A stretch of 64,000 nt of DNA, taken from NCBI GenBank assembly GCA_965153285.1, contig OZ229118.1; one strand, 5' to 3'. The position numbers were made by a program, and so were the translations under genes. This document shows, piece after piece, positions 1,252-64,000 of the stretch (position 1 is its first letter; each line of letters begins with the position of its first letter). The stretch comes from Podarcis tiliguerta. Lineage: Eukaryota. The notes below the pieces were generated by a model. That model did no database searches and had not been told where the DNA came from. It worked only from the letters and a program-made list of their open reading frames with translations.

Positions 1252-4200
1252 CTAAAGGCACACAGAACATAATCTTTTACTGAATTTTTGGATACCAAAA
1301 TGGAATTAGTCTTGCAGATAGGCTCTTCCTCTGTAGAAAGGTATACCTCATGGAGCAACTGACAGGAATGAGCAAGATCAAAAACCTGAAATATAATATA
1401 GTATGGAAATGAATTGGTTTGAGATGGCTGCTGACCACTTTGTATCTGAGCCCAAATTGTAAAATCACCAAGAAAAGTAACTGTAAGAAGTGGTTATGTA
1501 AGGCCACTTGGAATACAATTAAAGGCTTGAATCCTGTATCTCTTTCTTCTGATCCCAGCATCAGTATAAAAATATCTGTTAATGTCTGCTGATCTACATA
1601 AGATCTGATTCAAAGGTTAGTAATCCTTAAGTCTTGTTTGCTTTATTATCAATTACATTTATAGTTTCCCCATAACTAAGATTCATGGGGTGACTAACAG
1701 TTCCAAACAAAGACTTAAATTCAATACAATACCAATGAACTAACAGCACAAAAATCTAGCAAAACACAACCAACCACGTCAGTGCACAGAACATAATTCT
1801 ACCCACTGTCATAGATGTGATTTTTTAACAAAACAACACCTCACCTTAACCATGTGGCTGCCATTAAAAAACACCAGTAAGAGGTGCCCATTCATTGCAG
1901 ATGTTAGTATTGGAGTACCAACAAACTCGCCAGTTGCATATACCACTTTTTCCAGGGAAAGATCCCAGATTTTAATGGTGCTTTTGTCAGACACAGCCAC
2001 CAGTCTGTTCTCCAGACACACTGAAATTGCACTGATATTATTCCCAACTCCATGCAGAGTGAAGACAGCTTTGCCGACCCTCAAATCCCACAATTTCAGA
2101 GTTCCATCACTGGAGACTGTTGCAACAGTGAGTTCTTCCTGAGTTTCTCCAATTGCTACAATTCTGTCCAAGTGGCCTATGGATCCATGGGAGTAAAATG
2201 TTAGAATTCACTCTGGGGAAAAGCAGCTTCAGTAGCATCAGTTAGAACCTTCCTGTGAAACTCAGATAAATGGGTAGCAGTTCATCATCATTTATTAATT
2301 TATACCACTTACTTGTCAAAATGGTTTCTTAGCAGTTTAGAAAACTGATTCTAAGAAGTTTTTTATGGCAGAGGCTGGATGGTTAGCTGTCATGGATGCT
2401 TTAGTTGAGATTCTTGCATTTCAGGGGGTTGGACTAGATGACCCTTGGGGTCCCTTCCAACTCTACAATTCTATGATAATTAAAGCACACACTAAAACAA
2501 TTCCATCAAACCATTAAAATAAGCATCCAGTTAATACAATAAAGAAACCCATTAAAACAACATAATAATTAAAAAGAGAACATAAACTATATTTAGGAAT
2601 AATTACCATAATAACTTAAATGTAAGTACATATCACCATGATGGAGGGCTGGGGAAGACTGTGCTAGGCTGATCATCATGCTTGCTTGTTCAGCCTACAG
2701 TCCGGGTCCTAACTGTTGATGGGCAATTTCAAGGGCTCTGTTTTCCCTTCTTTTAGATCTCTATTTTTAAATCTGACTTGGACTGGACAGACCTTCAAAC
2801 AGAAGACATCCTTCAAACAGAGGACTGCCCTCTGTAGAATAGGACACATGACCACCCTACGCATTATCAAGCCCATAATCACTTAGCCCAGAATATGTCT
2901 CATGCTACCTGAGCACAATATCATGAAACGTTCTAAATCTTTCTAAGTGGGGGTTACTTTCTAAATGAGGATGGGCACCATCTTGTATTTTGCCTCAGGC
3001 AGCAAAATGTCAGCAAACAGGCAGAGCGGCCAAAACACAAGTTATAAGAAACAATGTGATTATTTTCTCTCTCTATCCAAACCATAAGGAAAGGTCTGAT
3101 TGCTTTTCTAGTGGTGCAGAAGGGACTGAATGGTAAGAATTATAGATGCAACGCTAAAATGATATACATAGGGAATAGACATCAAGCAAAGGTTGCTAGA
3201 AACTTCGTAACTTCTGGTCTTTAGCAAAATCTTGCAAAGGGCTTAGAGGGCTTAGAACTTCAGCACTGATTCGCCATTAAAAGGTTTCTAAAAGATTAAT
3301 ATTATTCTCCCTTACCTCTCAAAAGGTCGCAGAGAAGTCTACCAGGTTCTATAAGGCAGGCTGTTGAAGGTAGAAGAACAGGAATAGAAGATTTCTGACA
3401 TTGGGACAAAAGAGCTGGCAGATAGGGATATTTTTTGGGATCACCTGAACCAACACAATATAATGTATGTTAGTCATTCAATGAGCTGATTTTAAAACTG
3501 TAATAAATATGACATGGGTTTGTTTATTTTTACCCTGTTGCCCTGAATTCTGCATTATTTCAAATGTTTTAAAATGCATGGCCATCCAGGTCTCTTTCTC
3601 TCTGACCCTCAGAAGTCTCCTTAGGCCACAATCCTCACTGTGTGTGTTTCACACCTCTACTGTTTTTTGCCTGACTGGAATGTGTCCTTGAACTCTGAAA
3701 ATGAGTCAGTCTTCCCTGGATGGAGTACAGAGAGGAGTGTGGGGGTGTGTAGAAACTAGACTACAAAGCTAAAATTTACATTTGTTGTTCTGCCCACTTT
3801 TGCCTCTGGCCCCATTCCTCAGAAGGGAATGTAGTCCTTAGACTGAAAAAGGTTCCCAGCCCTCAATTACATTCTTACATTTGCCTCCAGTATTCCTTTC
3901 TGCCTCCGGTCATGACTAATCCTCCGGGAAACTTGTAAGTATAGTTTGGTTCTGCCAGGGCCATCGCGTCCCATTTCGCCGCTTGAGGCAAAACAGGAAG
4001 TGCCACCCTGTCCTGTGGACATGGAATCAGCGATGATTTTGGGTGAGATCTCATGTGCCCCCAAAGATTCTAGTGCAAATTTGGCTCCAGTGGCAGAGAG
4101 GGTGGGAGATTTGCAGGGGAACCACGTTAGGGGTTTCCACTGCCTGAGGCAGTGGCCTCACTTTGCCAAATGGCTGGCCCGGCCCTGGGTTTTGTCTTGG

Positions 4201-7200
4201 ATGCTTAAGTCCCAGTAGTGACTAATAATGGTTGGAGCTCAAAACAAAATATCAAAAATATAGAAAACGCAAAATACTTGCTGAAAAATCTAAATCTCAC
4301 AATTTTCAGTACCTGGGGCCACTGGTTTATCTGCTGCAATGATACGATGAAGGCGGCCTATAAGCTGTGAAGCCATCTGACAAGGGTCTTGTAGTAAAAC
4401 TTTCTTGGATAACTTGAGCGCTTCACTTAATAAAGTTAAGTCACGTATAGTCCTGTGGAGGAGGCAAGGCGGCAGGAATCACATCACATTTGAGTTTCCT
4501 TGCTCTAATATCAATAAAACACTAGAGGGGTTTTTACAGAGAAGTGGTTTTCACAGTGAAACATTGTGGGACTCAACTATTTATTGTTAAGAAACGAAAG
4601 GCCAGCTGAGGGGCAGGGTGGAAACTAAACTCATAATAACTTGATTAGCATGTAACTAGAATCTTTATTTGAATGTAGCTTTGATTGTTAAACAAAATGG
4701 ATTGCTGAACAGTGCTATAAACAATGGAAGTGGTTTGGAAGATAGAGCAATATGTGCCCACCTTTCAGCTAGCCTGCTGCCCTTAGGTGGGATGAAGATC
4801 AATTTACCTGTGTTAAAGTAAGTAAACACGTTGAAAGCAGGATCATATCACTTTTAAGCAGTCCTGACTTCACTCAAAGAATACTGAGAACTAGTTTTTA
4901 AAGTGCTGAGAGTTGTTAGGAGACCCCTATTTTCCTGTCAAAGTTACAGTTCCCAGAGTTCAATGGGAAGAGGGGTTGGCTGTAAACTATCCTGAAAATT
5001 ATAGTTTTGTGAGGGGAAGAAGGGTCTCTTAACAACTCTCAGCACTCTTAACAAACCAGAATTCTTCGGGATAAGCTGTGACTGGTAGAATCTACACACA
5101 TATTTTTAAAAAGCCTGTGATAATCCCTTTTTAAAAAAATACATTGAATTTGGCATAGCTCACTGTTGCCATCTAGTGTCACATTTGTATATTGCACTTT
5201 ACAACACATTTAAAGTGTTTTATTTGCAGCTGTATAGCTGGGTCCACTGTTAAAAATGGTATCAAACTGCTCTAAATGTATAGTGCAGATGAGGCCTAAG
5301 AGTCAATGGCCATCACATAGAAAAATGGTGTGCACCATTTTGTCTTTCACCTGAGGCAGTCAAATCTCTTGGCCAGGCCCTACTATCATACCAGATTAAT
5401 TGATTACAGGCTGTAAGTATGAGGGTTTGTGATTAAGTAAAATAAGCTCTAGACATTCACAGTTGTGTTCTACTGCTGTAAGCCTACCTGTCTGCATCGA
5501 TAGCTGCTCTTAGATCCGCTTCAATGCTGATAACTGATGAAGCCCAGGCTTTGTATAAGAGAAACTCATAATTAAAGAGACATTCTTTGATTAAGGCAGT
5601 AATGTTCTTAGATTTGATGAGGTGATACGGAGCCCCAAGGAGCTTACGAACATTAAAGGTGTAGCTGATCTTGGACTCTTTTTCTAAAGTCCAGGCCAAA
5701 GGTTGAAATGCAGACATTTCAATGAGTTTATGTGGAATTCTACCCAGGTAATAATCTGCAAAGGTGGCATGCAGCGATGCCTGGGAATCCTGTGTTCTGA
5801 GATATCTGTCCATGCAGACATGTCTCAGAGATGTATGAGCCCAATTAAAAACATAAGTGTGGTCAGTTCTTTGCTCTTTCAGGTGGTCTCCAAAATCATC
5901 CAAAAGTTTCAACCACAGCACTAGCGGGAATGCTGAAATTGAGACTTTTTGGAATTTAGCTACTTCCTTAATAACCACTTCATCCGTTGACATAAGGTGG
6001 AGCAGCTCTTCCTGAGTAATACCATTTCTTGAAAGTGTGGTATAAGCTGCCATCTTTTTTACAACTTGTTCTCCGTGGGATTTTTCCATTCTGTTCAGTG
6101 TCCATGAATACAGATCAGGTATATTTTGAGGAAGACACACCTCTGCCTCTGGGGTGAAAGATGTCCATAAACAGGACTCCTTATAGGCACAGTGTACAAA
6201 GAGTGGTACTGGGCAGGCTGTGCATGCTTCCATTAGGCGATCATGCTGTTGCTGGGGAAGTCTTCGGCAATCCTTTTCTAACCAGGAGCTGATCATCTCA
6301 CTGATTTCTCCAAATGTCAAAGGAGGTATTTGTAAAATATTCTCTTTCGCTGTTATTTTCTGAGGAAAAGAAGCATATCTCAATTATCATATCAGAGGCA
6401 GATTTAGAGCACTTGCAGCATTGAAACTATGATGTAGTGAATGCGCAAAACAGTAGGCAAAAGATAGGGGAGGACAAAATTTTGGCCTCCCACAGGGTGC
6501 TGCTGAAATTTGAAAGACCAAAGTCTGCCCCTGATCACATTGTCTCCAGACCTGATTGAGTTGGTGTCATTTTGCCAGCCTAATACAAGACAGCCTATTT
6601 ACCGTAAAATATAAGAACCGAAAAAGGATTTAATATCACTGGATTTCTGCACTTCTTCATCCAATAACCAGATCTGTGGGGCAGATAACTATACCTATAA
6701 ATCTCTGCCAGGATTCTACAGGTTGGATCTTCAAGTTTTGAATCAAGACTCAGGGTTAATACTAAATACCTGTGGGGCAGTTTGACTATAAAAGATAGGT
6801 GGCATGTTCTCTTTTAGACTAGACAGATCCGAGAGGGACTGGAGCAAAATCTGACACTCTCCTGGGTCTTATCTTTCTTGACTCACATCTGATATCAGGA
6901 AAGGGCTACAAAACACAGACGTAACTGACCTTGGAATTATGGCATAGACGTAGAATGAAATGGCTGCCTTAAATGCAGGGATTTTTGATACTGGTCTTTT
7001 TTGGACTTTCCAAGGATGGAGAAAAAAACCCGCATTTAAAGGGGGAAAGGTACAGGACGACACTGGGATAGGGGAAGTGCCATATAGATGCCGCTCTGTC
7101 AATGTAGAGACAGGCTAGTGCGAATCCACATTTTGCTCCAGTGTGGAAAAACCCATAGAGGAAAAAGTGTATACACACCAAGAAAGTTAAACAGAACAGT

Positions 7201-10200
7201 TTGTATATGGGCAAAGAAAGTAAGCTTTTACAAGCTAAAGTCTCTTCAGGGTCTGCTGTTGCTTTGGGGTGAGTGTTGTCTAGCACTCTCTTACCTATAC
7301 CTTCCTATTCGCCCTGGGCTCCTTTGAGAGGAAAGGTAGAATATAAATTCAGTAAATAAATTACTCAAGCTTTAAATAAACAGATACCACAAAAGCACCA
7401 TAGGCTTGATCCAATGGGTCACTGTGGGTACAGCAACACTCACATTTAGAAAGGTCTGCATAGCGCACAACAGAGTCAGGATCCACTCTGAGGCCTAAGC
7501 CCATGAGCACTCAATATGCTAGTCTATTATTACATGGAATGGGAGGTCTGGTTACAAGTTTCATATCCCCAGCCAACTTACCTCTTCCACTTCCTCAAGG
7601 AAAGCAAAATTAGGGCATGACTCTCAGTTTCCCCTAAGGATACGGGGTGGGGCACAATGTTCTAAGCCCTATGTGGGAATCCATGAGCATTTGTTCTCAT
7701 GGTTGATTGGATCAAGGCCCTTAAGGTTGCAATCCTGTACACACCTATGTGGGACTTAGACCCATTGATTTCAACAGGACTTTCTTTCAAGGATAGGATG
7801 TGCTGAAAGTGTCCAGTACTGACCCTACCAAACTGCCCTGGATTTTCCCACTGTTTGAGAAAGTGTGGAATGAAAAAAACAACTGAATAAAGTATCGCTT
7901 TACCTCCAGTTTTTTGAAGCATGAAAAACTTGATTCGGTGCACGTGGAAACAATAAAATACACATTCTTTGGTAATTCAGGAGGTATCCAAGGAAAATCT
8001 GCAACATGTTCCTCTGATAATTCATCTATGCCATCCAGACATATTAGAAGTGGTTTGTCTTGTGTGGCAGACTCCAGTAATGAGAGAAACTCTTCCACCA
8101 ATCCTTCAAAATCCTTTTTGAGAAAGATAGCAAACATTTTAGCCAGTCCCAAGTAGCTATGGCTACTGTGTTGGGTCACAGGAACAGAGTTGCCTGAAAA
8201 TTCTGTTCAACGTTTTTCAGCTAATCAACGTAATTTGCATTCATTGTTATCCTTTAGCTGAAATATCCCAGAAGGTTGTTACCTTTTCCAGATAAACCTT
8301 TTTCTTCAATAAATGTTGCAGAAGTTCTTCGTAGAGGAACAGATGCTTCAAAATTACATGTCCCAGAGAGCCCTGTGATATGTTTCCACAAAAGTTCATA
8401 GTCCTTATTCATTTTTGCTGCTATAATCAAATCAAGCACATCTTCAAACTTTTGAAACACTGTTTTCAGCTAAAAGCTATGTATAAAAATGTGTATTTTA
8501 GGGTATATTTGTGAAAATATATGTATGGAAACAATTTGAATTTTCATGCATTTACTAAAATTCACAGGTTGATGTGGAAATGTGACAAAACAGACTTACG
8601 AATGAACACATAAGAAACTGATATGGCGTGGAAATAAACCAATCTATTCATTCCTAGGTAAGAATGATTATTATTATTATTAAAGACTATGATTGAGTAA
8701 GGAGAGGAAATGAAATGTCAGCTCAGCAAAAATAATGGATACCAAGGGATTCCTAATGGCTTGCAGAATATTAAAAAGGTGTTGGCAATAGAAATTGTGG
8801 GAAATCTGTCTTAACTTTGGAGATGTTCTCTGACATGTGTTGGCTGTAGACATGCAACACATTACAGTGTTTGATAATGCAGTGATGGAGATGTGCCCCA
8901 GGATCCCCTTTGTTTTCCCATGTTGAACTGATTATGAGCACTGTCAGCTGTAATAGCACTGGTCCTTTGCTGAAAAGTGTTTCTTGGTTTCTGACCTTTC
9001 ATTATCTGAGCAGCACCGTCAGCATTATGCTTGAGCTATTTTGTCATCTTCCACTCTTAACTTTTATTTCTTGCTGAATCATGTGGAGGGGAAAGTGTGT
9101 GCATGTAGGTGCTGCTGCCGTAAAAATGCAACAGTATAATTTTTCCTTTGAGCCTTAAAAAGAAGGAAAATTTAATTCGTTACCTTGGATAAATTAACCG
9201 AGACCTTGTAGATAGAAGCTATCTGGTAGCAAAGACTGAAGAGAGTCAGTCGGATATTTCTGCTTTCACCAGTAACACCAATAAATCGAATTACAACTCT
9301 GAGGTTCCTGAATGAAAAGGGGGGGAAAGCAAATAAAATAAAATAGCTTTTTACCTTGCTTATGAAAATGTTTTCTTTTTAATACATGTGTTAAATCAAT
9401 GTATGTGTGCCGTTACTGTATCATCTAGTTGAAGGTGGACTTAACGTTGTGAACAGTGAATGTTGGGCTCAGAGTAAAATATGCAAATATAAAGGTATTA
9501 ATTTAGTTTATATATTGTTATCAATATGGAATAATTTTACATTTCACAGAATTCACAGCACTCTGTGATACCAGCTAAGACAAATCAAAGGGAGCAAATA
9601 TGGTAGCTAGTAAGCAACAGTTGGGAGCTGGATATGGGTAACACTGGGTTTATCTCTATTATCTTTATTCAAGAACTTTTATCTATGTTCCAAGTATCTG
9701 TGAATCTGCAAGAGGCCCTTACCCAGATATCCAGCTAGGAGCCAAAGAAGCGGCTTTTGCTATGACGGCAGTTTTCCCGCATCCAGTCTCTCCACAAATT
9801 ACAACTAGCTTTCTGTTCAAGGATGCAAGGCGATTCTTCAGTTTGCACAAAAACATTTCTCTTCCTATTAGAGATTTAACCCTGTTTTGAGAGGGGAAAA
9901 CAAAACACTATTTGTGTTTAGTCACCACTGAGTACTGGCTAAGACTGACGCTGTGCACACACCATACCTTTAAAACACATTTAAAGCTCATATTCCCCCA
10001 CGAAGAATCCTGAGAACTGCAGCTTCTTGAGGATGCTGAGAATTGTAGCTCTGGGAGGGGTAAACTACATTTAATATTATTCTCAGGTGTGAGCGGGCAG
10101 GGGAATGTGCTTTGGATGTGCTTTAAAGGTGTGGTGTGTATGCAGCCTAAAATCCTATATCAACGTATCTGAGGGCTACAAGTAAGTGGCCCAGCACTCC

Positions 10201-19200: not shown

Positions 19201-22200
19201 CTCTAGCACCACTAGTTATAATGACTTTTAGGAGCACGATTTATTTCACAGGCAATTGTAAATTCTCAGCACACACTTTTCAGATTAACTTGCTATGCAA
19301 TATTTGGTGTATTTTTTTTTTGTTCTTTTGAACACTTACATTTGCAAAAAAAAAAGCAGAAAACTGCACAAGCAAATTACATTAAAATTTTCTATTATGT
19401 GATTTGCTTGTGTTGTTTTCTGGTTTTGTGCAAATCTGAGGGATGAAACAAATAAACTAAAAAAGTATAGTTCAAGAGCACTCCAGAAATAGTTATCGGC
19501 ATGGCTGGAAAAGCAATGAAAACACTGAGGAGATAGTAGGTGAGGAAAGTGACAATTTACCTATCCACCCCAAAACACCAGCTTATACCACAATAAATCT
19601 GTTAGTCTTAAGATTTTTAACACAAAATTCTGGTGCTTTTGGTTGTACCTTGATAGCCTCCACAGATATAGATCATGAAGATTTTCCTTTTGGATAAACA
19701 CAGAGAATTGATTTGTCCTCTAATGGCAGCTCTGTTTGTATTGCCATCTGAAGACTTGCATGGATAGCATCTGGTTTCATTAGTTATTCCCTGGTCTTGA
19801 AGCAAACGAGCACTAAAGGTTTTTACTTTTTCAGTCTGGGTTTTCAGGTGAGGTAGACTGGATGATGAGGATCCACAGACAGCGGCTCTGTCTGCTTTAT
19901 CTTCTGAACTATTTACATCTGATAACATTAGAGAACCTGATAACACACTTCTCGATAAATCCATTATCCTTCTGTTAATTTTCTTTTCATCAGTTGTCTT
20001 GGTGTTTTCTGAATGGTGGGTTTCTTCACTTGTTTGCCGTTGGAGGAGCCATTTGTTTGTATACGTTGATTTCTGGGTTTCTGTTTCTTTGTGTCTAGAA
20101 ATTACAACTTTTTCAATCAATTCAGTAGTTTTATCCCCATCCAGTGACTCATTTGAGCAAACACTAAAACTTGAATAGTGGCATTTCATCTGATTTATGT
20201 TTGCCTCCGGCTAAAAACAAATAAATGAACAAGCCCATAATTAATTAGATAGCCTTTATAAACTGCCATTTTAATTGCATATATACTGTTGAGCATGCAT
20301 TTCTCTTTATCTCATATACACACAAAATGCCTGTTGACTTCTGCAGTAGTAGTACATATAAGAGATGCAAGATTGGAAAAGGAGGCTAAAATCATGCTTT
20401 GTTGATTTTTAGACTACCTAAATTTGAAATGCTTCACATTACACCAGGGTTAGCAGACATGAAGCCCTCAGATGTTTGACTCCAACTCCCATCCGCCCCA
20501 GCCAGCATGAATAATGATCATGGATGATGAGAGTTGTAGGCCAACTTGTCCTCTGCAAGGATTTTGATCATACATGGACAGCAATGCATAGGGAAAGGAG
20601 AGACCAATACAATATCTGTTATTGGAATCACCTGGCACTGCAGAATAATATAGAAACATACTAGCGGAAGGCTGCAACAACTACACAGTATTGGGGATGC
20701 TGCACAGGTCAGCACAACCGCACACCAGGCTGTGCGGGTCCCCGCAGCGTCTCCTGACACCACACAGGAATGCCCTCCCATCAGATGTCAAACAACTATT
20801 TGACTTTTGGAAGATGCCTAAACAGCAGCCCTGTTCAGGGAAGTTTTATTGTGCTTTTAATATTTTGTTGGGAGCAGCCCAGACTGACTGGGGCAACCCA
20901 GTCAGATGGGCGGCATATAAATAACAAAATCCTTATCCATATAATTCTCATCATCTGGTGATTTCTGTCTTACCCTTAGAATAAACATCTCTGGGTTTCT
21001 CACATGTGATTGACTTTTATCCTCTGATGTGTGTCTCAAGCTTTTCGCAAAATGGAAAGACGTGCAGTGCTAGTGATAAACAAAGCAAATGTTAGGGACA
21101 TTTTGTTTTCCACCCCTTTCAAAAAATTTAAAGGCAAGTAATTACCTACCTTTAAGTGTTTCCTCACTTGCATGTCTGTTTCTTCAGTTATTTTCATATA
21201 CGGTACATGCCAATGACATTTTTGTTTCTAGAAGTAATTTAATAATATAATATAAAAATGGTAAATGAGGGAATTTACTGATGGTGAGGTAATACTTTTA
21301 ATGACCGCTCTTCCCCTTACAGAGCTAATTTCTAGTGTAGTTTAACAATCAATGCCTATTCCCAAGGTACTTGGGGAATTGTAACTCTGTAAGGAGTTGG
21401 GGTCTCCTAAAACTCTCAGTACCCTTAACAAACTATACTTCCTAGAATCCTTTTGGGAAAGACATGGCTGCTTGAAGAGGTATGATACTGCTTTAAATGT
21501 GCAGTACAGATGTGGCCAGAGAGATGTAAATGGGCCAAAATTTGTGAATCTTTCAAGAATGTTTTGACCCTACAAAAGTTTCTTTTTAATGCCCCAAGGG
21601 TCCACATGAGAACATTGCTGATGAATATATACATCATGTGAAATTTTACTTGTAGTATCATAGACTTGTAGAGTTGGAAGGGACCACAAGGGCCAACAAG
21701 TCTACACCCTTCAACATTTCTCCGATGAAAATAGGGACGTCCCATTCCATAATGATAATTTTACTGTTCATACCCCACACATCTTACTGGGTTGCCCCAG
21801 CCACTCTAGGCAGCTTCCAACATATATAAAAACATAATAAAACACTAAACATTTAAAAAACCGAAAACCTTCCCTATACAAGTTTGCCTTCAGACGATTC
21901 GAGGGTTTGATAACTCCATACCCTCCAACATTTCTACAATGAAAACAGGGACATCCTAGGAAAAGTGGGACATTCCAGGACCAAATCAGAAACCGGGACG
22001 GCTTCTCTAAATCAGGGGTGTCCCTGGGAAATTGGGACACTTGGAGGGTCTGCTAGGCCAACCTCCTGCTATGCAGGAATCTTTTTGCCCTACATTGGGC
22101 TCAAACCCACTAAGAGTCTCATGCTCTAGCGACTGAACTATAGTGACGGTTCTGTTCACATAAATGGGAAGAAATATATTTTCTAACAGCGATTCATAGC

Positions 22201-25200
22201 TTCCCTGGGATGAATGATACTCATGCTGAAACCAGAGCTCCTAATAATTAATAGTAAGGTTAAAAGGTAAAGGTACCCCTGCCCGTACGGGCCAGTCTTG
22301 CCAGACTCTAGGGTTGTGCGCTCATCTCACTCTAGAGGCCGGGAGCCAGCGCTGTCTGCAGACACTTCCGGGTCACGTGGCCAGCGTGACAAGCTGCATC
22401 TGGCGAGCCAGCGCAGCACACGGAACACCGTAATAATTAATAGTACTTCTATTTAAAAAGCAGGAAAGTTATTGGTTCTCCTTTGATTTCAACTTCCTTT
22501 AAACATATGCTTGTATCAGTGTATGACAACAAGGCTTTTTTTTTGCATTTCCTAGGATTATGCTATTACTGTACTTAGGTTATTAAACCATTCATGCTTT
22601 GGGAATACACAACACCTCATTAACCTCACCATCAAGCCAGAACAGTAACTCACCCCAGTCCATTTTGAGCAAATATCTTTGCACACATATTTCTGTGAAT
22701 GTGACATCTGTGGGGAGAAGAACAATTCTTGGAGGCTTCTAGAGTGTCCTCGGCTATGCAAATTACCGGAAGGCTAAAAAGAAAAATAAATGCATGTGGC
22801 AGGTTTGGTATAATCCCTTTCATTTCATTAATTTATTACATTTCTATACACTTCATCCAAAGATCTCAGGGCAGTTCCCAACATAAAAATACAAAAATAC
22901 AAAATAAAAACAAAAATACAAATTAAATAATTAAATTAAATTAAATTAAAGCACTACCGTATATACTTTATTTGATTACCCAGCTATTCTTAATATTCCA
23001 CAGGCTAACCGATGGTGTCTTCAGACTGACACTTTATTGTGGGAAGGTTTCAGTCGTATACTGGATGTTAGGTTTGTACAATTAAAGTGGATTTAAATGC
23101 TCTGTTGCCCTAGCACAACAAATCCACTTTAAAAGAAACCCAGATATTTTGCAGTATGGAAAGTGATGAGGAAATGTATTTAAAAATGTGGGATGTACGA
23201 AGGATAAATGGAAATATGTGTAAAGATCCTACAAAACAAATCAGGAAGTATACTCATAACTACCCCCACATAATCAAATCAAGAGGAATGCTTAATTAGA
23301 TTGGGAAAAGTCTAACCACAACATATGCTTCGTGCAAGCAAGTCTGGATGAATGCTTAATTATTATTATTTTTAAAAAAGTCTGGATGAATGCTGAATAA
23401 ATAGGTTGTCTGGAGGAGCATCAAGTTACATGCTAATCAACAGTGATAGAAATTTAGGTTGTGATTCCTAAAGAAACTTGATTAGGGAGTAAACCTCACT
23501 GACCACAGTGCAATTTACTTTCAAGTAAGCAGGGCTAGAACTCCACCACATATAATGAAAAGTGCATTATTGTTAAAATACTTACAGTCACAATATTATC
23601 CAATCGTCTTTTATGAATTGAAGGTAAAACAATTGTTTCTTTGTCACCCTGTAGGAAATACAGCATAAAATTTTGCTGTGCCTCAATTTTGCAAACTACG
23701 CATTCAGCCAAAGCCAGATAAAAATAATGCCTATTGTTGCAAGACTAGAAAAGGCTACATAGGCTCTGGAAATGGTGTGTACCAATTTTATAAAAATGAA
23801 TCTGTATCTGTATACAAAATACATAACAAAATAATGTTTTATATAATTCTACGCAAAGTGTTTGGAACCCCCACCCCACCCCCAAATCCAAAGGAGAGTG
23901 TTCAGAAACTTTAGCTGGCCCAGAATGCTGCAACCAGATTATTGAGTGGAGCAGGTTTCAGGGAGAATTTTACTCTTTTGTTAAACCAACTTCGCAGGCT
24001 ACTTGTGCATTTCCAAGCATAATTGAAAGTGCTGGTTATGACCTACAAAGCCCTATGTGGTTTGGACCCAGGCCTTCTGAAAGATTGTATGTCCCTATAA
24101 AGCTTATGCAGATGCCAAGATCCCAGTGGCGTAGCGTGGGTTGTCAGCACCCGGGGCAAGGCAAGTAGTTTGTGCCCCCTAACCCGTGGATTAGTGCCCC
24201 CTAACCCGTGGATTTGCGCCCCCTAACCCTAACCTCCAGATGTTGCGCCCAGTGCGGCCGGGCCCCCCCCTGCACCCCCCACGCTATGCCACTGCAAGAT
24301 CCTCAGGTGAGCATCTTCTCTTGATCCCATCAACATAGGACCCATGGGTGGGGGTGATGCAAGAGAGAGCTTTTTCCATGGTCGCTTCCATATTGTGGAA
24401 TTCCCTCCCAAGAGAAGTTAGACTGCCTCCCCTCTTTGTTACCCTTCCTCCTGCAGGCTAAGATCTCCTTATTCAGGCAGGCCTTGAAAATGCAGATGAG
24501 ATCACTGGGCTGCTGGAAGGGCAAACTGATACCACCAGATAAGTGAAAAGTGGCTGCGGTGCACGGAGGCCACCGCATGATCTCACAGGATCTTGCTGAA
24601 ATCCAGAAGTTGCAGCCGTGCAACTGGTTAGCAAGGCCAGAGGTAAGGTCGTGTGTGTGGTGCATGTGTCGGGCAGCCGCTTGCTATTTCACCTCAGGCA
24701 GCAAAATAGGCTGAGCCTGCTTCTGTGTCTGCATGGGCCTAGGGCACATGCTCATTTTATGCCGGCTTCTAATGGTTTTATGTTGGCTGTGTTGATATGT
24801 TCTTAATTGGTCCTGATTCTATTTGATGGTGATTCTGTATTTATTGATTCATAACTTTTCGAAACACCTAGATGACTTTGTTGATAAGCAGCATAAAAAT
24901 GTTGTAAATAAGTAAGTACGATATATTACATCTATTCTCCCTTTCTTAATCTGTGAGAATTTAACAGAAAGATTGGGCACTTTTAAATTGAAATGAAGAT
25001 ACAGAGGAGGGAGTATATATCGCCTCTAATAATATAAAAGCTAGCATAAAAATTGAACAGCAGATTTAGAATCATAGAATCATAGAATCATAGAGTTGGA
25101 AGAGACCACAAGGGTCATCCAGTCCAACCCCCTGCCAAGCAGGAAACACCATCAGAGCACTCCTGACATATGGTTGTCAAGCCTCTGCTTAAAGACCTCC

Positions 25201-26536
25201 AAAGAAGGAGACTCCACCACACTCCTTGGCAGCAAATTCCACTGTCGAACAGCTCTTACTGTCAGGAAGTTCTTCCTAATGTTTAGGTGGAATCTTCTTT
25301 CTTGTAGTTTGTATCCATTGCTCCGTGTCCGCTTCTCTGGAGCAGCAGAAAACAACCTTTCTCCCTCCTCTATGTGACATCCTTTTATATATTTGAACAT
25401 GGCTATCATATCACCCCTTAACCTCCTCTTCTCCAGGCTAAACATGCCCAGCTCCCTTAGCCGATCCTCATAAGGCATTGTTTCCAGGCCTTTGACCATT
25501 TTGGTTGCCCTCCTCTGTACACGTTCTAGTTTGTCAGTGTCCTTCTTGAACTGTGGTGCCCAGAACTGGACACAGTACTCCAGGTGAGGTCTGACCAGAG
25601 CAGAATACAGTGGCACTATAACTTCCCTTGATCTAGATGCTATACTCCTATTGATGCAGCCCAGAATTGCATTGGCTTTTTTAGCTGCCGCGTCACACTG
25701 TTGGCTCATGTTAAGTTTGTGGTCAACCAAGACTCCTAGATCCTTTTCACATGTACTGCTCTCAAGCCAGGTGTCACCCATCTTGTATTTGTGCCTCTCA
25801 TTTTTTTTGCCCAAGTGCAATACTTTACATTTCTCCCTGTTAAAATTCATCTTGTTTGTTTTGGCCCAGTTCTCTAATCTGTCAAGGTCGTTTTGAAGTG
25901 TGATCCTGTCTTCTGGGGTGTTAGCCACCCCTCCCAGTTTGGTGTCATCTGCAAATTTGATCAGGATGCCCTTGAGTCCATCATCCAAGTCGTTGATAAA
26001 GATGTTGAATAAGACCGGGCCCAAGACAGAACCCTGTGGCACCCCACTAGTCACTCTTCTCCAGGATGAAGAGGAACCATTGATGAGCACCCTTTGGGTC
26101 CGGTCAGTCAGCCAGTTACAAATCCACTGAGTGGTAGCATAGTCAAGCCCGCATTTTACCAGCTTCTTTACAAGAATATCATGGGGCACCTTGTCAAATG
26201 CCTTGCTGAAATTTATTTTGAAACAACGTTTTAGATAAGGAGATCATAACCTTTCAATATTCATAATGTGTTGAAATCTGCTGACAGTTTTGAGTTGAAA
26301 ATAATACAAGGGTTAGGTATCGTTCATCTATGCTTTTTAACACTGGGGTTCTTACACAGCCCAGATACCACCTCCAAAAAGGTGAGGGTAAAATACAAAG
26401 TTTTAGAACAGAAACCAACATAGTAAAACTAGTTTTAAATTATAGTTTTAATAAAATATCTAAGATTTACTCAAAAGGTACTTACTGTATGTAGAGGCTT
26501 CTGAGACAAATATCCTTTTGTGTAAGCTGCCCACAT
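1252..26536 (-). CDS. NACHT and WD40 repeat domain-containing protein (NWD1/NWD2-like STAND NTPase: DUF4062-like, NACHT, WD40); multi-exon, 3' end lies beyond the left edge of the window
   Basis: 20 phase-compatible GT-AG coding exons (minus, 5'->3'): 26536-26486, 23648-23586, 22773-22654, 21227-21150, 21069-20974, 20210-19649, 19018-18819, 18183-17771, 16472-16318, 16215-16007, 13669-13530, 12318-12208, 9881-9723, 9307-9184, 8113-7904, 6359-5488, 4452-4313, 3444-3316, 2176-1845, 1385-1252. Total 4298 nt, no internal stop. Motifs: [30 protein letters not shown] (DUF4062-like), WYRLDEN, Walker [17 protein letters not shown], Walker [13 protein letters not shown]40 [20 protein letters not shown] and [10 protein letters not shown]. 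The first five small exons rest on splice signals and open frame only (less certain). The ATG at 26536 has A at -3 and an in-frame upstream TAA. Confidence 0.88.
1845..2176 (-). CDS. NWD-like gene exon encoding WD40 repeats
   Basis: [47 protein letters not shown]; GH..WD repeat signature. Confidence 0.9.
2355..2477 (+). mobile_element. CR1 3'-terminal fragment
   Basis: gggggttggactagatgacccttggggtcccttccaactctacaattctatga; related short tails at ~21657, ~38890, ~40155 and ~48645. Confidence 0.75.
5488..6359 (-). CDS. NWD-like gene large exon (post-NACHT helical/winged-helix region)
   Basis: 872-nt exon inside ORF 5484..6383 (..[53 protein letters not shown]); acceptor cttttcctcag, donor gtaggc. 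Confidence 0.9.
7904..8113 (-). CDS. NWD-like gene exon with the NACHT Walker B
   Basis: Translates [57 protein letters not shown]...; hhhhDGhDE at 8021-8050. Confidence 0.9.
9723..9881 (-). CDS. NWD-like gene exon with the NACHT Walker A (P-loop); not in the ORF track
   Basis: Translates [52 protein letters not shown]; GxxGxGKT at 9770-9793; AG/GT boundaries in phase with both neighbours. Confidence 0.9.
11284..11680 (+). mobile_element. LINE (L2/CR1-clade) 3' end fragment
   Basis: ggctttggtcctgtataccttaagga..ttggaatgcccttcccatcag..gctggggcaacctagtcatatgggtggcatataaataaa; the same 3' end recurs at ~20765-20925. Confidence 0.55.
13816..14160 (+). mobile_element. Sauria SINE, full length
   Basis: tRNA-like head gggacgcgggcggcgctgtggt..tcgaatccc, (ACCTTT)n tail, 13-bp TSD taagatcaactta (13803-13815 and 14161-14173). 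Confidence 0.9.
14220..14560 (+). mobile_element. Non-autonomous DNA-transposon-like repeat containing a LINE-3'-like segment (copy 1)
   Basis: Ends caggccctccaa..ttggagggtatg; colinear with the reverse complement of 21706-22052. Confidence 0.7.
16868..16997. repeat. Interspersed repeat fragment (second copy at ~28905-29020)
   Basis: Both loci share tttttctagaaaaagaggtgct..accatga..acctcc..gttctcttata.tggcaatggc.cccacc..gaggtg.tggaactgagttc. Confidence 0.7.
18384..18674. mobile_element. hAT-type MITE
   Basis: Terminal inverted repeats caggggtgta / tacatccctg; perfect 8-bp TSD tccagata (18376-18383 and 18675-18682). Confidence 0.8.
18819..19018 (-). CDS. NWD-like gene exon encoding the core of the DUF4062-like N-terminal domain
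   Basis: Translates [67 protein letters not shown]. The ER..L..FP.L..C..F..VDLRWG pattern is typical of NWD1/NWD2/TEP1 N-termini. Acceptor ttaatcag, donor gtaagt. Confidence 0.88.
21706..22052 (-). mobile_element. Same repeat family, inverted copy 2, inserted into a short CR1-tail-like element
   Basis: Reverse complement aligns by eye to 14220-14560. Flanked by the split halves of atcatagacttgtagagttggaagggacc..ctaggccaacctcctgctatgcaggaatc. Confidence 0.7.
22257..22430 (-). mobile_element. Sauria SINE, 5'-truncated
   Basis: Tail aaggt(aaaggt)n on +; 15-bp TSD taataattaatagta (22242-22256 and 22431-22445). Confidence 0.88.
23913..24490 (+). mobile_element. Degenerate L2/CR1-clade LINE 3' fragment (interrupted by the 24124-24294 MITE)
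   Basis: cagaatgctgcaaccagatt..gtgctggttatgacctacaaagcccta..tgtggaattccctccc resembles the degraded LINE ORF2 C-terminus (QNAAARL..KVL..YKAL..LWNSLP); boundaries approximate. Confidence 0.55.
24124..24294. mobile_element. hAT-type MITE nested in an older LINE fragment
   Basis: TIRs cagtggcgtagcgtggg / cccacgctatgccactg; perfect 8-bp TSD caagatcc (24116-24123 and 24295-24302); internal tandem gtgccccctaacccgtggatt units. Confidence 0.85.
25067..26212 (-). mobile_element. CR1 LINE, 5'-truncated copy (C-terminal half of ORF2 reverse transcriptase plus 3' tail)
   Basis: ORF 25152..26189 with [39 protein letters not shown] (CR1 RT). 3' end is the (ATTCTATG)n microsatellite, read as tagaatca repeats on +. 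Truncated inside the DFSKAFDK motif. Confidence 0.96.
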
Positions 26537-32217: not shown

Positions 32218-39226
<7,009 letters not shown>

Positions 39227-40060
39227 GGCGCGACACCGGAGGAAACAGGAGCCCCCCCCCCAACCCCTTTCACTGCCCACCGTCCCTCCTCCCAGGTGAT
39301 CGCGACGCCCTCCTCTCCGCCAGGGCGAGATCCACGCAGCCCCGACCGATCCCGACAGCCGCCTACCCGTGCGCGTGCGCCGAAAATGACAAGAGGAGGC
39401 GGGCTCACGGCACCCGCGTCCTCCCCGCCCTTCCTATTGGGCGTGGGGGTCCACCCTTCCGCATCTTGTTCCCGGCTGGCTATTGGCCACAGGCTCTTTC
39501 AGACACGCCCTCTGGCTCGCTTCGGTTCCCTTACGCCAGTCCGACCTCTTTCCTGGTCCTCATTGGCTCTTCGTCGAACTCTAACGCTGCCCGCGCTCCA
39601 ATGGTTTCGTCCCTTGATGAGTCTTGGCGCTCATTGGGCAGCTGCAGACGTCGCTCTCAGCTGGTTTCGCACCCCTCCTCCCAACCCGCGGCTTGTTTGC
39701 TGGGCTCTTCAGTCAGGCCTTGGGCTGCTGCTGGACCCTTTCCCCTTCTTTCCTCCGTGGTTCGGTCGGGCCTTTCCCATGGACTGCGCCGGTGGAAGTT
39801 GAGCGGGGCCGCCTGTGGCGCTGAGGGGGAGCTGCTTCTTCCGCAGCGGCGCAGGTGCGGGTGGAGCGGGGCCGCGCGGGGCGTGGTGGGCTGCGAGGGG
39901 AAGGAGACGCGGGAGGGTCAGGCGCTGTCAGCTGTCGGGAGCGCCATGACTGGCTCCGGGAGGGGCCGCGGAGGGAAAGCGCCGGCAAGCGGCCTCGGGC
40001 GAGCAGGGACACCGCCGAGAAGCTCGGGGAAAGTTGGGCGAAACCTTCTAGGAAGCCGCT
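39227..40060. promoter_or_regulatory. CpG-island bidirectional promoter shared by RWDD4 and TRAPPC11
   Basis: Sharp rise in GC and CpG between the two divergent genes. NRF1-like TGCGCGTGCGC (39370-39380), GC box CCCCGCCC (39423-39430), five CCAAT/ATTGG boxes (39436, 39482, 39562, 39598, 39633), ETS-like GGAAGT (~39794). Confidence 0.85.
39800..39854 (+). other. TRAPPC11: Probable non-coding first exon of TRAPPC11 (start approximate)
   Basis: Donor-like GCAG|GTGCGG at 39854/39855 inside the CpG island. The ATG exon has an acceptor (actgtttcag) at 40440, so an upstream UTR exon is needed. Confidence 0.5.

Positions 40061-40399: not shown

Positions 40400-64000
<23,601 letters not shown>

What the first reader, a model, noticed from the sequence alone, without database searches (positions are those of the whole stretch)
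1252..26536. Intact NLR-like STAND NTPase (DUF4062-NACHT-WD40) next to RWDD4: candidate uncharacterised third NWD paralogue
Seen: 20 phase-consistent exons give ~1,430 stop-free codons with canonical Walker A (GETGCGKT), Walker B ([10 protein letters not shown]) and WD40 repeats, so the gene looks functional, not decayed. Known: this effector-NACHT-WD40 layout is that of NWD1, NWD2 and TEP1, and is analogous to APAF1 and fungal HET-E signalling switches. Human NWD1 is on 19p13 and NWD2 on 4p14, while RWDD4-TRAPPC11 is on 4q35, where I know of no NWD gene. Inference: a separate NWD-family paralogue kept in squamates (perhaps other non-mammals) and lost or unrecognised in mammals, i.e. an unstudied ligand-gated oligomerising signalling protein.
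Basis: partly seen in the sequence, partly recalled or inferred. Interest (0 to 1): 0.78.

Follow-up and report, generated by a model that had tools for sequence, protein, structure and literature searches.

The report
Unnamed NWD-family sensor gene beside RWDD4
This stretch holds the first 70% of a real, spliced lizard gene for a large switch-like protein (TIR-like head, ATPase core, WD40 tail) of the NWD family, which fishes, amphibians and reptiles keep under no name and which nobody seems to have studied.

Summary
On the minus strand, 20 exons (26536 to 1252) start at an ATG. All have AG/GT borders and matching phases and hold 1,432 stop-free codons. Four junctions are seen in spliced RNA contigs of three related species. 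Walker A, Walker B, an NWD-type winged helix and WD40 repeats are present.

The gene runs off the left end of the window, so about 620 residues of WD40 tail were not seen. It is the lacertid copy of RefSeq "uncharacterized protein LOC…" (Zootoca, Podarcis; 93-98% identical in the largest exon).

It belongs to a single-copy clade found from sharks to squamates and alligator. No bird, turtle or mammal is among the 99 clade proteins listed. The clade is not NWD2. It groups with invertebrate NWD-like proteins, apart from NWD2 and a further vertebrate "NWD2-like" clade. I could obtain no mammalian NWD1 sequence, so "orthologue of NWD1" stays open at about one in five.

The head is homologous to the TEP1 TIR-like NADase domain, although Pfam DUF4062 does not score. 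In this genome the residue aligned with the catalytic glutamate is lysine; it is glutamate in all six other lacertid proteins.

It is a new member of a known kind, of moderate interest.

The parts
26486..26536 (-). Exon 1, start codon ATG at 26536-26534, 17 codons
   Evidence: tblastn of P0173/P0439 residues 1-17; GT donor, phase 0
23586..23648 (-). Exon 2 (N-terminal extension)
   Evidence: AG/GT, phase 0/0
22654..22773 (-). Exon 3 (N-terminal extension)
21150..21227 (-). Exon 4 (N-terminal extension; 26 of 26 residues identical to Zootoca and Podarcis)
20974..21069 (-). Exon 5 (N-terminal extension); the intron before it is only 80 nt
19649..20210 (-). Exon 6: low-complexity extension, ending in the first strand of the TIR-like head (KIFMIY at 19685-19668; Phe aligned with TEP1 F902)
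18819..19018 (-). Exon 7: core of the TIR-like (TeTIR) head, with the DLRWG loop at 18926-18912 and the conserved Cys in LRKC at 18857-18846
   Evidence: BLASTP to the NWD2 head E 1e-10; profile hit to the TEP1 structure 11gz_A; motif columns
17771..18183 (-). Exon 8: rest of the TIR-like head: GQKHD (18174-18160), KEDLK (18132-18118), a clade-specific insert of roughly 80-90 residues between about 18093 and 17848, and WYRLDEN (17826-17806)
18118..18120 (-). Codon AAG (Lys) at the position aligned with the catalytic Glu E1008 of TEP1
   Evidence: codon; equivalence by spacing; Glu in 60 of 68 orthologues with the motif, and in 6 of 6 other lacertid proteins with the motif
16318..16472 (-). Exon 9 (linker between head and NACHT)
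16007..16215 (-). Exon 10; the 102-nt intron before it (16216-16317) is in frame and stop-free
   Evidence: the 34 residues it would add are absent from Zootoca and Podarcis proteins
13530..13669 (-). Exon 11
12208..12318 (-). Exon 12
9723..9881 (-). Exon 13: start of NACHT, Walker A GETGCGKT at 9793-9770
   Evidence: RNA contigs end their match at 9881 and join 9722/9723 to 9306/9307
9184..9307 (-). Exon 14 (NACHT)
   Evidence: spliced in contigs of runs X1 and X2 on both sides, and of X4 on the 3' side
7904..8113 (-). Exon 15: NACHT, Walker [11 protein letters not shown] at 8050-8021
5488..6359 (-). Exon 16 (872 nt): helical domain, NWD-type winged helix and second helical domain
   Evidence: Pfam PF25469 E 3.8e-18, 66 bits, cut-off 27; model pLDDT 91; best fold matches are STAND proteins 6mfv_A Z 12.1 and APAF-1 1z6t_A Z 11.0; spliced on both sides in X1 and X2
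4313..4452 (-). Exon 17
3316..3444 (-). Exon 18
1845..2176 (-). Exon 19: first WD40 blades
   Evidence: Pfam WD40 30 bits (cut-off 27) and TEP1-type propeller families under their cut-offs
1252..1385 (-). Exon 20: last exon in the window. Its GT donor, in phase 2, leads out of the window
   Evidence: no further block for P0173 residues beyond 1434

Best explanation
Window 1252-26536 (minus strand) is the 5' 70% of a real protein-coding gene. It is the lacertid copy of the unnamed RefSeq gene 'uncharacterized protein LOC118084041 / LOC114604050'.

The product has about 2,050 residues. In order, it has a poorly conserved N-terminal extension of about 310 residues, a TIR-like (TeTIR, DUF4062-related) head carrying a clade-specific insert, a NACHT ATPase, a helical / winged-helix / helical arm, and WD40 propellers.

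It belongs to a distinct single-copy orthologous group of the NWD family. The group is present in cartilaginous and ray-finned fishes, lungfish, coelacanth, amphibians, squamates and crocodilians. It separated from the NWD2 line before the sampled invertebrate lineages diverged.

Inferred mechanism, by analogy with APAF-1 and with what is proposed for TEP1: the WD40 propellers hold the ATPase closed. An unknown ligand releases it. Nucleotide exchange at the Walker A/B site drives ring assembly, which brings the TIR-like heads together. The heads then either cleave NAD+ or recruit partners.

Shown here: gene structure, splicing, domain homologies and clade membership. Inferred: ligand gating, oligomerisation and any NADase output.

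In this particular genome the residue aligned with the catalytic glutamate is lysine, so an NADase output is unlikely for this allele.
For: Gene model: 20 exons, all AG/GT, phases consistent, 1,432 stop-free codons.

RNA: spliced contigs join 4451|5487, 6359|7904, 8112|9183 and 9306|9722 in runs X1 and X2. Run X4 shows 8112|9183. All skipped pieces read CT..AC on the plus strand, which is GT..AG on the minus strand. One contig of run X2 is 4,712 nt long and crosses five exons.

Domains:
- Pfam HTH_NWD1 at 66 bits and WD40 at 30 bits on single exons.
- NACHT at 31.6 bits (cut-off 26.7) on the Zootoca orthologue.
- The exon-16 model (pLDDT 91.2) best matches the STAND proteins 6mfv_A (Z 12.1, 208 aligned), APAF-1 1z6t_A (Z 11.0, 234 aligned) and MalT 8bob_D (Z 9.8).

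Head:
- BLASTP of exon 7 against the NWD2 head gives E 1e-10.
- A profile of ten orthologue segments finds the TEP1 TIR-like domain 11gz_A as the best PDB hit, E 1.1e-4.
- An iterated search reaches bacterial DUF4062 proteins and TEP1.
- Phe, RWG and Cys are conserved.

Clade:
- 99 of the 120 listed hits are jawed-vertebrate proteins at E 8e-71 or better.
- FastTree places 102 of them plus the window in one clade with support 100, in an order broadly like the vertebrate tree.
- The careful tree gives the clade 100/100, the clade plus six invertebrate proteins 96/99, and NWD2 plus NWD2-like 98/100 elsewhere.
- The AU test rejects a vertebrate-only grouping, p 0.00036.

Constraint: 17 synonymous against 19 non-synonymous changed codons versus a relative's transcript, roughly dN/dS 0.35.
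Against: - No mammalian NWD1 sequence was available, so 'distinct from NWD1' is not tested by a tree.
- The C-terminal ~620 residues lie outside the window.
- Bulk RNA raw reads of one related species (X17, 12% of the run read) gave no exon cover.
- The runs with spliced contigs are only guessed to be RNA, although the splicing itself argues for RNA.
- Pfam DUF4062 fails to score.
- Lys replaces the predicted catalytic Glu in this genome.
- Human NWD1 and NWD2 showed no NADase activity in vitro (passages of 10.64898/2026.05.01.722283 and 10.64898/2026.09.04.749371). Activity of this head is therefore doubtful even where Glu is kept.
- The AU group was named after I had seen the tree.
- The tree rests on one exon's worth of columns (319).
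Confidence: 0.66

Rival explanations
1. It is simply the non-mammalian orthologue of NWD1. Under this reading, mammalian NWD1 is a fast-evolving, N-terminally truncated and relocated descendant of this gene. There would then be no extra paralogue and no loss in mammals.
For: - 11 of the 99 clade proteins are named NWD1 or NWD1-like by their sources, including a RefSeq alligator protein named NWD1 without 'like'.
- The nearest invertebrate relatives are named NWD1-like: Ptychodera and Plakobranchus.
- Fish papers count one 'NWD1/NACHT-P1' with stated orthologues in mouse and human (passages in PMC4852459 and PMC4039239). Catfish 'NWD1' entries fall in this clade.
- Human NWD1 is intron-rich, with 19 exons (passage in PMC4039239). 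This gene is too, whereas I recall NWD2 having few exons.
Against: - Most RefSeq names are 'uncharacterized protein LOC…' and the zebrafish member keeps a clone name. That is not what an accepted 1:1 orthologue of a named human gene usually gets.
- 7 of the 99 are named NWD2(-like), so similarity to the two human proteins is about equal.
- No mammalian protein is among the best 150 cluster representatives for the largest exon, which reach down to 103 bits, although brachiopod and hemichordate proteins reach 160 bits.
- No mammalian protein is among the 120 listed of 131 hits.
- Human NWD1 lies at 19p13.11 (passage in PMC4039239), not beside RWDD4.
- The TeTIR preprint (section 5 read) calls NWD1 closely related to NWD2.
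Confidence: 0.2
2. The gene family is real, but this species' copy is on its way out. The catalytic residue of the head is lost, evolution is fairly fast, and the unseen 3' third may be broken.
For: - Lys codon AAG at 18120-18118 where 6 of 6 other lacertid proteins with the motif and 60 of 68 clade proteins have Glu.
- About half of the changed codons versus a relative are non-synonymous.
Against: - There are 1,432 codons without a stop or frameshift, and all 39 splice sites are canonical.
- Walker A and Walker B are intact.
- The largest exon is 98% identical to Podarcis muralis.
- A rough dN/dS of 0.35 still indicates constraint.
- The position also varies in the clade (Asp 6, Gln 1, Asn 1) and among invertebrate relatives (Lys, Asn, Ser).
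- The lysine could be a polymorphism or an assembly error; I had no read call left to check it.
Confidence: 0.1
3. The head does not work as an enzyme in this clade at all. It is a protein-interaction or scaffold module, as animal TIR domains mostly are. The protein would then have a housekeeping role rather than a cell-death or immune one.
For: - Full-length human NWD1 and NWD2 did not cleave NAD+, and the NWD2 head had reduced or undetectable activity (passages of 10.64898/2026.05.01.722283 and 10.64898/2026.09.21.753143).
- In this clade the canonical 'YG' after strand C is replaced by HD, YD or HE, and 'SSTF' by 'CGGY'.
- Teleost members have lost the Trp of the RWG loop.
- The Lys in this genome is tolerated in an otherwise intact gene.
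Against: - Phe, Arg-Trp-Gly, Cys and Glu, the residues the preprints tie to NAD+ binding and catalysis in TEP1, are kept in nearly all of the 21 clade members aligned (Phe 19, full RWG 17, Cys 21, Glu 19 plus Asp 2).
- Glu or Asp is kept in 66 of 68 clade members with the motif.
Confidence: 0.35

Closest known systems
NWD2 (KIAA1239), vertebrate
   Same: Same order of TIR-like head, NACHT, NWD-type winged helix and WD40. The head aligns directly (E 1e-10), with the same spacing of the ExE and WY.xDEN motifs.
   Different: It is a different clade. Identity in the NACHT-to-winged-helix region is only 29%. NWD2 has no N-terminal extension of about 310 residues, no insert of about 80 residues in the head, and YWG instead of RWG. 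Species with this gene also have a true NWD2.
NWD1 (NACHT-P1), mammalian
   Same: Same family and architecture, and intron-rich. Automatic names often call clade members NWD1-like.
   Different: According to two preprints (passages read), human NWD1 has an N-terminally truncated head. This gene keeps the first strand and adds a long extension. Human NWD1 is at 19p13.11 (PMC4039239), and this gene lies beside RWDD4 and TRAPPC11.
TEP1 (telomerase / vault protein 1), TIR-like NADase domain, PDB 11gz
   Same: It is the best solved-structure match of the head profile. It shares Phe, the RWG loop, Cys and (in the orthologues) the catalytic Glu. It is also followed by NACHT and WD40.
   Different: TEP1 has TROVE and VWA domains in front and an extra segment of about 25 residues before the catalytic helix. 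This clade has its insert after that helix. TEP1 is an active NADase (preprints); nothing is known for this protein.
APAF-1 / Dark apoptosome proteins
   Same: The exon-16 model matches the helical / winged-helix / helical arm of APAF-1 (Z 11.0, 234 residues aligned) and Dark (Z 9.0 and 8.6). These proteins also have WD40 sensor propellers after the ATPase.
   Different: They have an NB-ARC ATPase, not NACHT, and a CARD head instead of a TIR-like head. There is no detectable sequence relation outside the P-loop.
Vertebrate 'NWD2-like' clade (Latimeria H3A8Q7, sharks, sturgeon, gar, lungfish, axolotl, frogs, teleosts)
   Same: It is another unnamed vertebrate NWD-family group that shows no amniote among the rows above true NWD2 in the listing.
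   Different: It is sister to NWD2 (98/100), not to this clade. Its members have about 1,650 residues and no head insert.
Invertebrate NWD-like proteins (Ptychodera XP_070532605, Lingula LOC106180985, Plakobranchus)
   Same: They are the nearest relatives in the tree (96/99). The Ptychodera protein also has a long acidic insert at the same place in the head.
   Different: Identity is 30-33%. They keep 'YG' and 'SS..' where the vertebrate clade has 'HD' and 'CGGY'.

Membership tests
STAND NTPase of the NACHT type | Walker A (GxxGxGK[ST]) and Walker B (hhhhD[GAS]hDE) in that order | tested here: met
   GETGCGKT at 9793-9770 and [10 protein letters not shown] at 8050-8021. Walker B is conserved in 21 of 21 aligned clade members and Walker A in 20 of 21; the zebrafish row is gapped at Walker A.
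STAND NTPase of the NACHT type | Pfam NACHT (PF05729) at or above its gathering score | tested here: inconclusive
The Zootoca orthologue P0173 scores 31.6 bits, above the cut-off.
STAND NTPase of the NACHT type | Helical domain, winged helix and second helical domain after the ATPase | tested here: met
   The exon-16 model has pLDDT 91.2. The top fold matches are 6mfv_A (STAND, Z 12.1), APAF-1 (Z 11.0) and MalT (Z 9.8). Foldseek alone gave no E of 0.001 or better.
NWD family (NWD1/NWD2-like) | NWD1-type winged helix (Pfam PF25469) | tested here: met
   E 3.8e-18, 66 bits, cut-off 27.
NWD family (NWD1/NWD2-like) | TIR-like head directly upstream of NACHT and WD40 repeats downstream | tested here: met
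   Exons 6-8 encode the head, exons 13-15 the NACHT domain and exons 19-20 WD40. Only the first part of the WD40 region lies in the window.
NWD2 orthologous group | Branches inside the vertebrate NWD2 clade | tested here: not met
   NWD2 forms a clade at 100/99 that excludes it. The window sits in a separate clade at 100/100.
NWD1 orthologous group | Branches with mammalian NWD1 | not testable with these tools
TeTIR / DUF4062 / NIR TIR-like NADase domain | Pfam DUF4062 (PF13271) match | tested here: not met
   0 families for the exon-7 segment at E up to 1. 1 of 10 orthologue segments matches at E 0.12. It is not among the 25 families shown of 29 for P0173. One preprint notes that eukaryotic domains with inserts escape such profiles (passage of 10.64898/2026.09.04.749371).
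TeTIR / DUF4062 / NIR TIR-like NADase domain | Profile-level homology to a solved or accepted member | tested here: met
   Profile A1 against the PDB finds TEP1 11gz_A best, E 1.1e-4; the next hit is at E 0.024. The iterated search reaches PF13271-bearing bacterial proteins and TEP1. The E-values are for a small set of 436 preselected proteins.
TeTIR / DUF4062 / NIR TIR-like NADase domain | Conserved Phe, Arg-Trp-Gly loop and Cys (TEP1 F902, R942, C959) | tested here: met
   KIFMIY, DLRWG and LRKC. The numbering of 11gz_A was worked out.
TeTIR / DUF4062 / NIR TIR-like NADase domain | Catalytic glutamate (TEP1 E1008) | tested here: not met
   The window has Lys (AAG at 18120-18118). Orthologues have Glu in 60, Asp in 6, Gln in 1 and Asn in 1 of 68 with the motif. 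The equivalence rests on my alignment and spacing argument, not on a structure.
TeTIR / DUF4062 / NIR TIR-like NADase domain | NAD+ hydrolysis | not testable with these tools
   This needs a biochemical assay.

The most novel reading that the evidence does not exclude
Jawed vertebrates ancestrally carried a further TIR-like-head STAND sensor besides NWD1, NWD2 and TEP1. It descends from an old bilaterian NWD line, lies beside RWDD4-TRAPPC11, and has the full TEP1-type active-site set (Phe, RWG, Cys, Glu). Birds and mammals, and perhaps turtles, lost it. Where kept, it is an NAD+-cleaving, ligand-gated cell-death or immune switch, and this lizard carries a natural catalytic-dead (Glu to Lys) allele.
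Probability: 0.25. Interest if true: 0.7.

Novelty: new member of a known kind. Interest (0 to 1): 0.5.

Why it matters
Three 2026 preprints showed that the DUF4062 / TeTIR / NIR head of TEP1 is a TIR-like NADase linked to bacterial anti-phage immunity. In the parts I read, they count only TEP1, NWD1, NWD2, TTC41 and NPHP3 in mammals.

This clade is widely conserved in non-mammalian vertebrates and keeps the TEP1-type active-site residues better than NWD2 does (RWG, not YWG). It is therefore a candidate second active animal NADase-STAND and a case of lineage-specific loss of an innate-immune-like sensor.

It also shows that 'NWD1' and 'NWD2' labels in fish, amphibian and reptile annotations cover at least four different vertebrate gene lineages. 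That matters for anyone who transfers mouse Nwd1 function to other vertebrates.

Against this, the gene is already predicted in about a hundred genomes, the family is known, and no function was tested here.

Tried and rejected
- Single-exon searches of the head failed. The exon-7 segment gave no Pfam family at E up to 1 and no meaningful PDB hit (one chain at E 1.7).
- The protein atlas query with the largest exon gave only unnamed clusters and a 33% PF25469 cluster, which told nothing about relatives.
- I tried four routes to a mammalian NWD1 sequence:
  - the representative search (the best 150 held none, and 20 of the representatives were named);
  - the lungfish orthologue as query;
  - the first 940 residues of penguin NWD2, so that the length window would shut out full-length NWD2 (34 hits, none a mammalian NWD1);
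  - the coelacanth 'NWD2' H3A8Q7, which turned out to define a further vertebrate clade and not NWD1.
The only hint is a corn-snake protein of this clade filed as 'RWDD4 isoform X1'.
- Raw RNA reads of run X17 covered only a repeat at about 4900-5400 and no exon.
- Foldseek against the PDB gave no match at E 0.001 or better. The alignment-based search did.
- I considered that the Glu of the WY.xDEN motif might be the catalytic one. I rejected this because TEP1 has RDSS there.
- I considered the reverse-transcriptase ORF at 25155-26243 as a possible exon. I rejected it as a LINE fragment in intron 1 (RVT_1).
- Earlier findings of the scan held nothing on NWD genes.
- Stein et al. 2007, the first description of NACHT-P1, is not held.
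- Supplementary files of the papers are closed. The phylogenies in the supplements of PMC4852459, PMC8455134 and the three preprints may bear on the NWD1 question.


Full report
**What is there.** The window is vertebrate DNA of about 40% G+C with no N. On the minus strand between 26536 and 1252 lie stop-free segments that carry a P-loop, a Walker B and WD40 repeats. Each exon was translated and searched on its own, and stored orthologue proteins served as stand-ins for the whole.

**Pfam on single segments.** Pfam on ten open segments gave these results:
- The NWD1-type winged helix PF25469 on 5487-6383 (E 3.8e-18, 66 bits, cut-off 27).
- WD40 on 1812-2207 (30 bits, cut-off 27).
- Only sub-threshold P-loop families on the Walker A segment (NACHT 13.8 bits against 26.7).

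**Gene model.** The best relative of the largest exon is Zootoca vivipara 'uncharacterized protein LOC118084041' (P0173, 2053 aa, 93% identical). Its cluster also holds Podarcis muralis LOC114604050, P. raffonei LOC128420733 and a P. lilfordi protein. The window is 98% identical to P. muralis in that exon but identical to none of them. It therefore comes from another lacertid lizard.

tblastn of P0173 gives colinear blocks for residues 1-1434 and nothing beyond.
- 20 exons with an ATG at 26536.
- 19 of 19 acceptors AG and 20 of 20 donors GT.
- Matching phases at all 19 introns, no stop in any exon, and none in the nine split codons.
- 4,298 nt in total, which is 1,432 codons plus 2 nt.

The last donor, at 1252, leads out of the window. 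About 620 residues of WD40 tail are therefore unseen, and 'intact' is shown only for the first 70%.

**Splicing in RNA.** One search for sequencing runs and one laying of reads on 4250-9950 were allowed. Assembled contigs of three runs from three coded organisms, relatives of the window's species, carry the spliced form:
- 9306|9722, 6359|7904 and 4451|5487 in runs X1 and X2.
- 8112|9183 in runs X1, X2 and X4.

Every skipped piece reads CT..AC on the plus strand, which is GT..AG for a minus-strand gene. One X2 contig of 4,712 nt crosses five exons with 46 differences in 1,507 nt. These runs are only guessed to be RNA, but intron-less contigs with canonical borders are hard to explain otherwise. 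Raw reads of a bulk RNA run of organism C (X17, 12% of it read) covered no exon, only a repeat. Expression in that sample is therefore low or absent.

Of the 46 differences, 37 are listed in the output. They change 36 codons, 17 synonymously and 19 not. With the usual three-to-one ratio of site classes this gives a dN/dS near 0.35. The gene is constrained, but not strongly.

**Domains.**
- Walker A (GETGCGKT, 9793-9770) and Walker B ([10 protein letters not shown], 8050-8021) are canonical. Walker B is conserved in 21 of 21 aligned clade members and Walker A in 20 of 21; the zebrafish row is gapped there.
- The Zootoca orthologue passes Pfam NACHT (31.6 bits, cut-off 26.7), HTH_NWD1 (61.5 bits) and NPHP3_N.
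- A model of exon 16 alone, built with 32 homologues as its alignment, has mean pLDDT 91.2.
- Foldseek found nothing at E 0.001 or better, although APAF-1 had the best TM-score at 0.53-0.54.
- The alignment-based search put STAND proteins on top over the whole model: 6mfv_A (Z 12.1, rmsd 4.5, 208 aligned), APAF-1 1z6t_A (Z 11.0, 4.3, 234), MalT 8bob_D (Z 9.8), Dark, Avs3 and NLRP3.
- For helical models Z near 12 is at the edge of what the tool's notes call safe. The agreement of the families is what I lean on.

**The head.**
- Exon 7 aligns with the N-terminal domain of penguin NWD2 (BLASTP E 1e-10, 34% over 59 residues).
- An iterated search seeded with P0173 305-545 against the 436 proteins then stored reaches NWD2, bacterial proteins that carry Pfam DUF4062, and wombat TEP1. 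That set is small and preselected, so its E-values flatter.
- A profile of ten 126-residue orthologue segments finds the solved TEP1 TIR-like domain 11gz_A as the best PDB hit (E 1.1e-4; the next hit is at 0.024).
- Pfam DUF4062 itself matches only 1 of the 10 segments, at E 0.12.

**What the preprints say about this domain.** Three 2026 preprints show that it is a TIR-like NADase in TEP1, with F902, R942 (RWG loop), C959 and the catalytic E1008. They also report that human NWD1 and NWD2 were inactive in vitro. For 10.64898/2026.09.21.753143 I read the abstract, section 5 and passages. For 10.64898/2026.05.01.722283 and 10.64898/2026.09.04.749371 I read passages only.

**The lysine.** By aligning wombat TEP1 to 11gz_A I fixed the numbering: chain residue i is residue 893+i, and E1008 is the second Glu of SVTEME. 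In short-form bacterial proteins, NWD2, NWD2-like and invertebrate proteins, a Glu lies 14 residues after the 'YG' that follows strand C. It also lies 18-20 residues before the Tyr or Phe of the (W/I/F)(Y/F)xxD motif. E1008 has the same 20-residue spacing in TEP1.

At that position 68 of 102 clade proteins examined gave a motif match. Of these, 60 have Glu, 6 Asp, 1 Gln and 1 Asn. All six other lacertid proteins with the motif have Glu.

The window has Lys, codon AAG at 18120-18118. Phe, RWG and Cys are kept. The equivalence is my inference from sequence spacing, not from a structure. I could not check the codon in reads.

**Which gene family branch.** The representative search with the largest exon found 2,519 proteins at E 0.001 or better, of which 150 are listed. 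The top ten are vertebrate. The rest of those I could name are molluscan, brachiopod or hemichordate NWD-like proteins.

With the lungfish member as query, 131 proteins passed E 1e-10 and 120 are listed:
- 99 are jawed-vertebrate proteins at E 8e-71 or better. They come from sharks and rays, bichir, sturgeon, gar, bowfin, teleosts (zebrafish si:ch211-212k18.6), lungfish, caecilians, salamanders, frogs, many squamates and alligator. Crocodile and gharial fragments and a coelacanth fragment appear.
- None of the 99 is from a bird, a turtle or a mammal.
- By my count 11 are named NWD1(-like), 7 NWD2(-like), one 'RWDD4 isoform X1' (corn snake, which suggests adjacency there too), and 80 uncharacterized or generic.
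- The other 21 rows are seven invertebrate, protist or unnamed proteins, one trematode protein and 13 penguin NWD2 at 29% identity.

**Trees.** FastTree on 188 rows used the window plus the 187 of 272 hit proteins that covered at least 230 of the 292 exon positions. It puts the window with 102 of these proteins in one clade (support 100, stem 0.78), in an order broadly like the vertebrate tree.

A careful IQ-TREE run used 64 rows: the window and 63 proteins that I picked out of the 436 then stored, with 319 columns. It gives this clade 100/100, NWD2 100/99, and a further vertebrate clade 100/99 that is sister to NWD2 (98/100). That further clade is the 'NWD2-like' group found with coelacanth H3A8Q7, plus teleost proteins named NWD2.

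The present clade groups instead with six invertebrate proteins (Ptychodera, Lingula, Plakobranchus and three unnamed) at 96/99. An AU test rejects a tree that holds all vertebrate rows together (p 0.00036). I named that group after seeing the tree. Crotalus adamanteus, Alligator and Latimeria each have a true NWD2 as well as a member of this clade.

**What stays open.** I obtained no mammalian NWD1 sequence. Whether this clade is a lineage of its own or the non-mammalian orthologue of NWD1 is therefore argued only indirectly.

Against orthology:
- RefSeq mostly names these genes 'uncharacterized LOC'.
- The names are split between NWD1-like and NWD2-like.
- No mammalian protein is among the best 150 representatives, although protostome proteins are.
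- Human NWD1 lies at 19p13.11 (passage in PMC4039239).
- NWD1 has a truncated head (preprints).

For orthology:
- RefSeq names the alligator protein NWD1.
- Fish papers count one 'NWD1/NACHT-P1' with mouse and human orthologues (passages in PMC4852459, PMC4039239, PMC6988351, PMC10253273 and PMC8455134).
- Both genes are intron-rich.

I put the orthologue reading at about 0.2. Loss in birds and mammals rests on the absence of predicted proteins from these listings alone.

**Literature.**
- A search for 'ch211-212k18.6' found 0 papers.
- A search for 'NWD3', 'NWD1-like' or 'NWD2-like' found only fungal or unrelated uses (search listing).
- In the parts I read, the three preprints list only mammalian members.

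**How it most likely works.** By architecture and fold it is an APAF-1-like switch, with a WD40 sensor, a NACHT nucleotide switch with an intact P-loop and Walker B, and an N-terminal effector. The effector is of the TEP1 type. In most orthologues it keeps every residue that the preprints tie to NAD+ binding and catalysis, so ligand-triggered ring assembly with NAD+ cleavage is the natural guess.

Only the parts are shown here. Gating, assembly and enzyme activity are inferred. The inactivity of human NWD1 and NWD2 in vitro and the lysine in this genome both weaken the enzyme part.

**Verdict.** This is a new, unnamed member (orthologous group) of a known kind of protein, and it is already present in automated annotation. 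Interest is moderate. It gains from the 2026 finding that this head is an NADase, and it loses from the untested NWD1 relation and the lack of any functional data.

Noticed in passing
window 18118-18120 (minus strand): Codon AAG (Lys) sits where six other lacertid proteins and 60 of 68 clade members have the Glu that aligns with the catalytic E1008 of TEP1. It could be a species change, a polymorphism or an assembly error.
   Followed up: partly
window 16216-16317 (minus strand): The 102-nt intron between exons 9 and 10 is in frame and stop-free. If retained it would add 34 residues, which are absent from the Zootoca and Podarcis proteins.
   Followed up: partly
window 25155-26243 (minus strand): A 363-codon stop-free reverse-transcriptase ORF (Pfam RVT_1, E 2e-23) lies inside intron 1 of the gene. 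It is a LINE fragment, not an exon.
   Followed up: partly
window about 4900-5400: A repeat in the intron between exons 16 and 17 draws very deep cover from all four runs, with many loose ends at 5022 and 5056. It behaves like a SINE-type element expressed in or carried by many transcripts.
   Followed up: no
window 38001-40000: G+C rises to 0.59 between the RWD-domain gene (minus strand) and the TRAPPC11-like gene (plus strand). This looks like a shared CpG-island promoter.
   Followed up: no
stored proteins P0313, P0332-P0346, P0354, P0397, P0316, P0317, P0320, P0352: A further vertebrate NWD-family clade, labelled 'NWD2-like' or 'NWD2', is present in sharks, coelacanth, lungfish, amphibians and ray-finned fishes. 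It is sister to true NWD2, and no amniote appears among the rows above true NWD2 in the listing.
   Followed up: partly
stored protein P0164: The corn-snake member of this clade is filed in RefSeq as 'RWD domain-containing protein 4 isoform X1', although its precomputed Pfam listing shows no RWD family. The two neighbouring genes seem to be merged in that annotation.
   Followed up: no
stored proteins P0001 and P0151: Two unnamed Logan-assembly fragments, 70-72% identical to the largest exon, branch as sister to all squamates. They may come from a tuatara or another reptile that has no named protein here.
   Followed up: no
window about 52600-52850 and 56700-56950: Long (CA)n / (TG)n microsatellites, read as runs of His-Thr in translation, lie in TRAPPC11 introns.
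   Followed up: no
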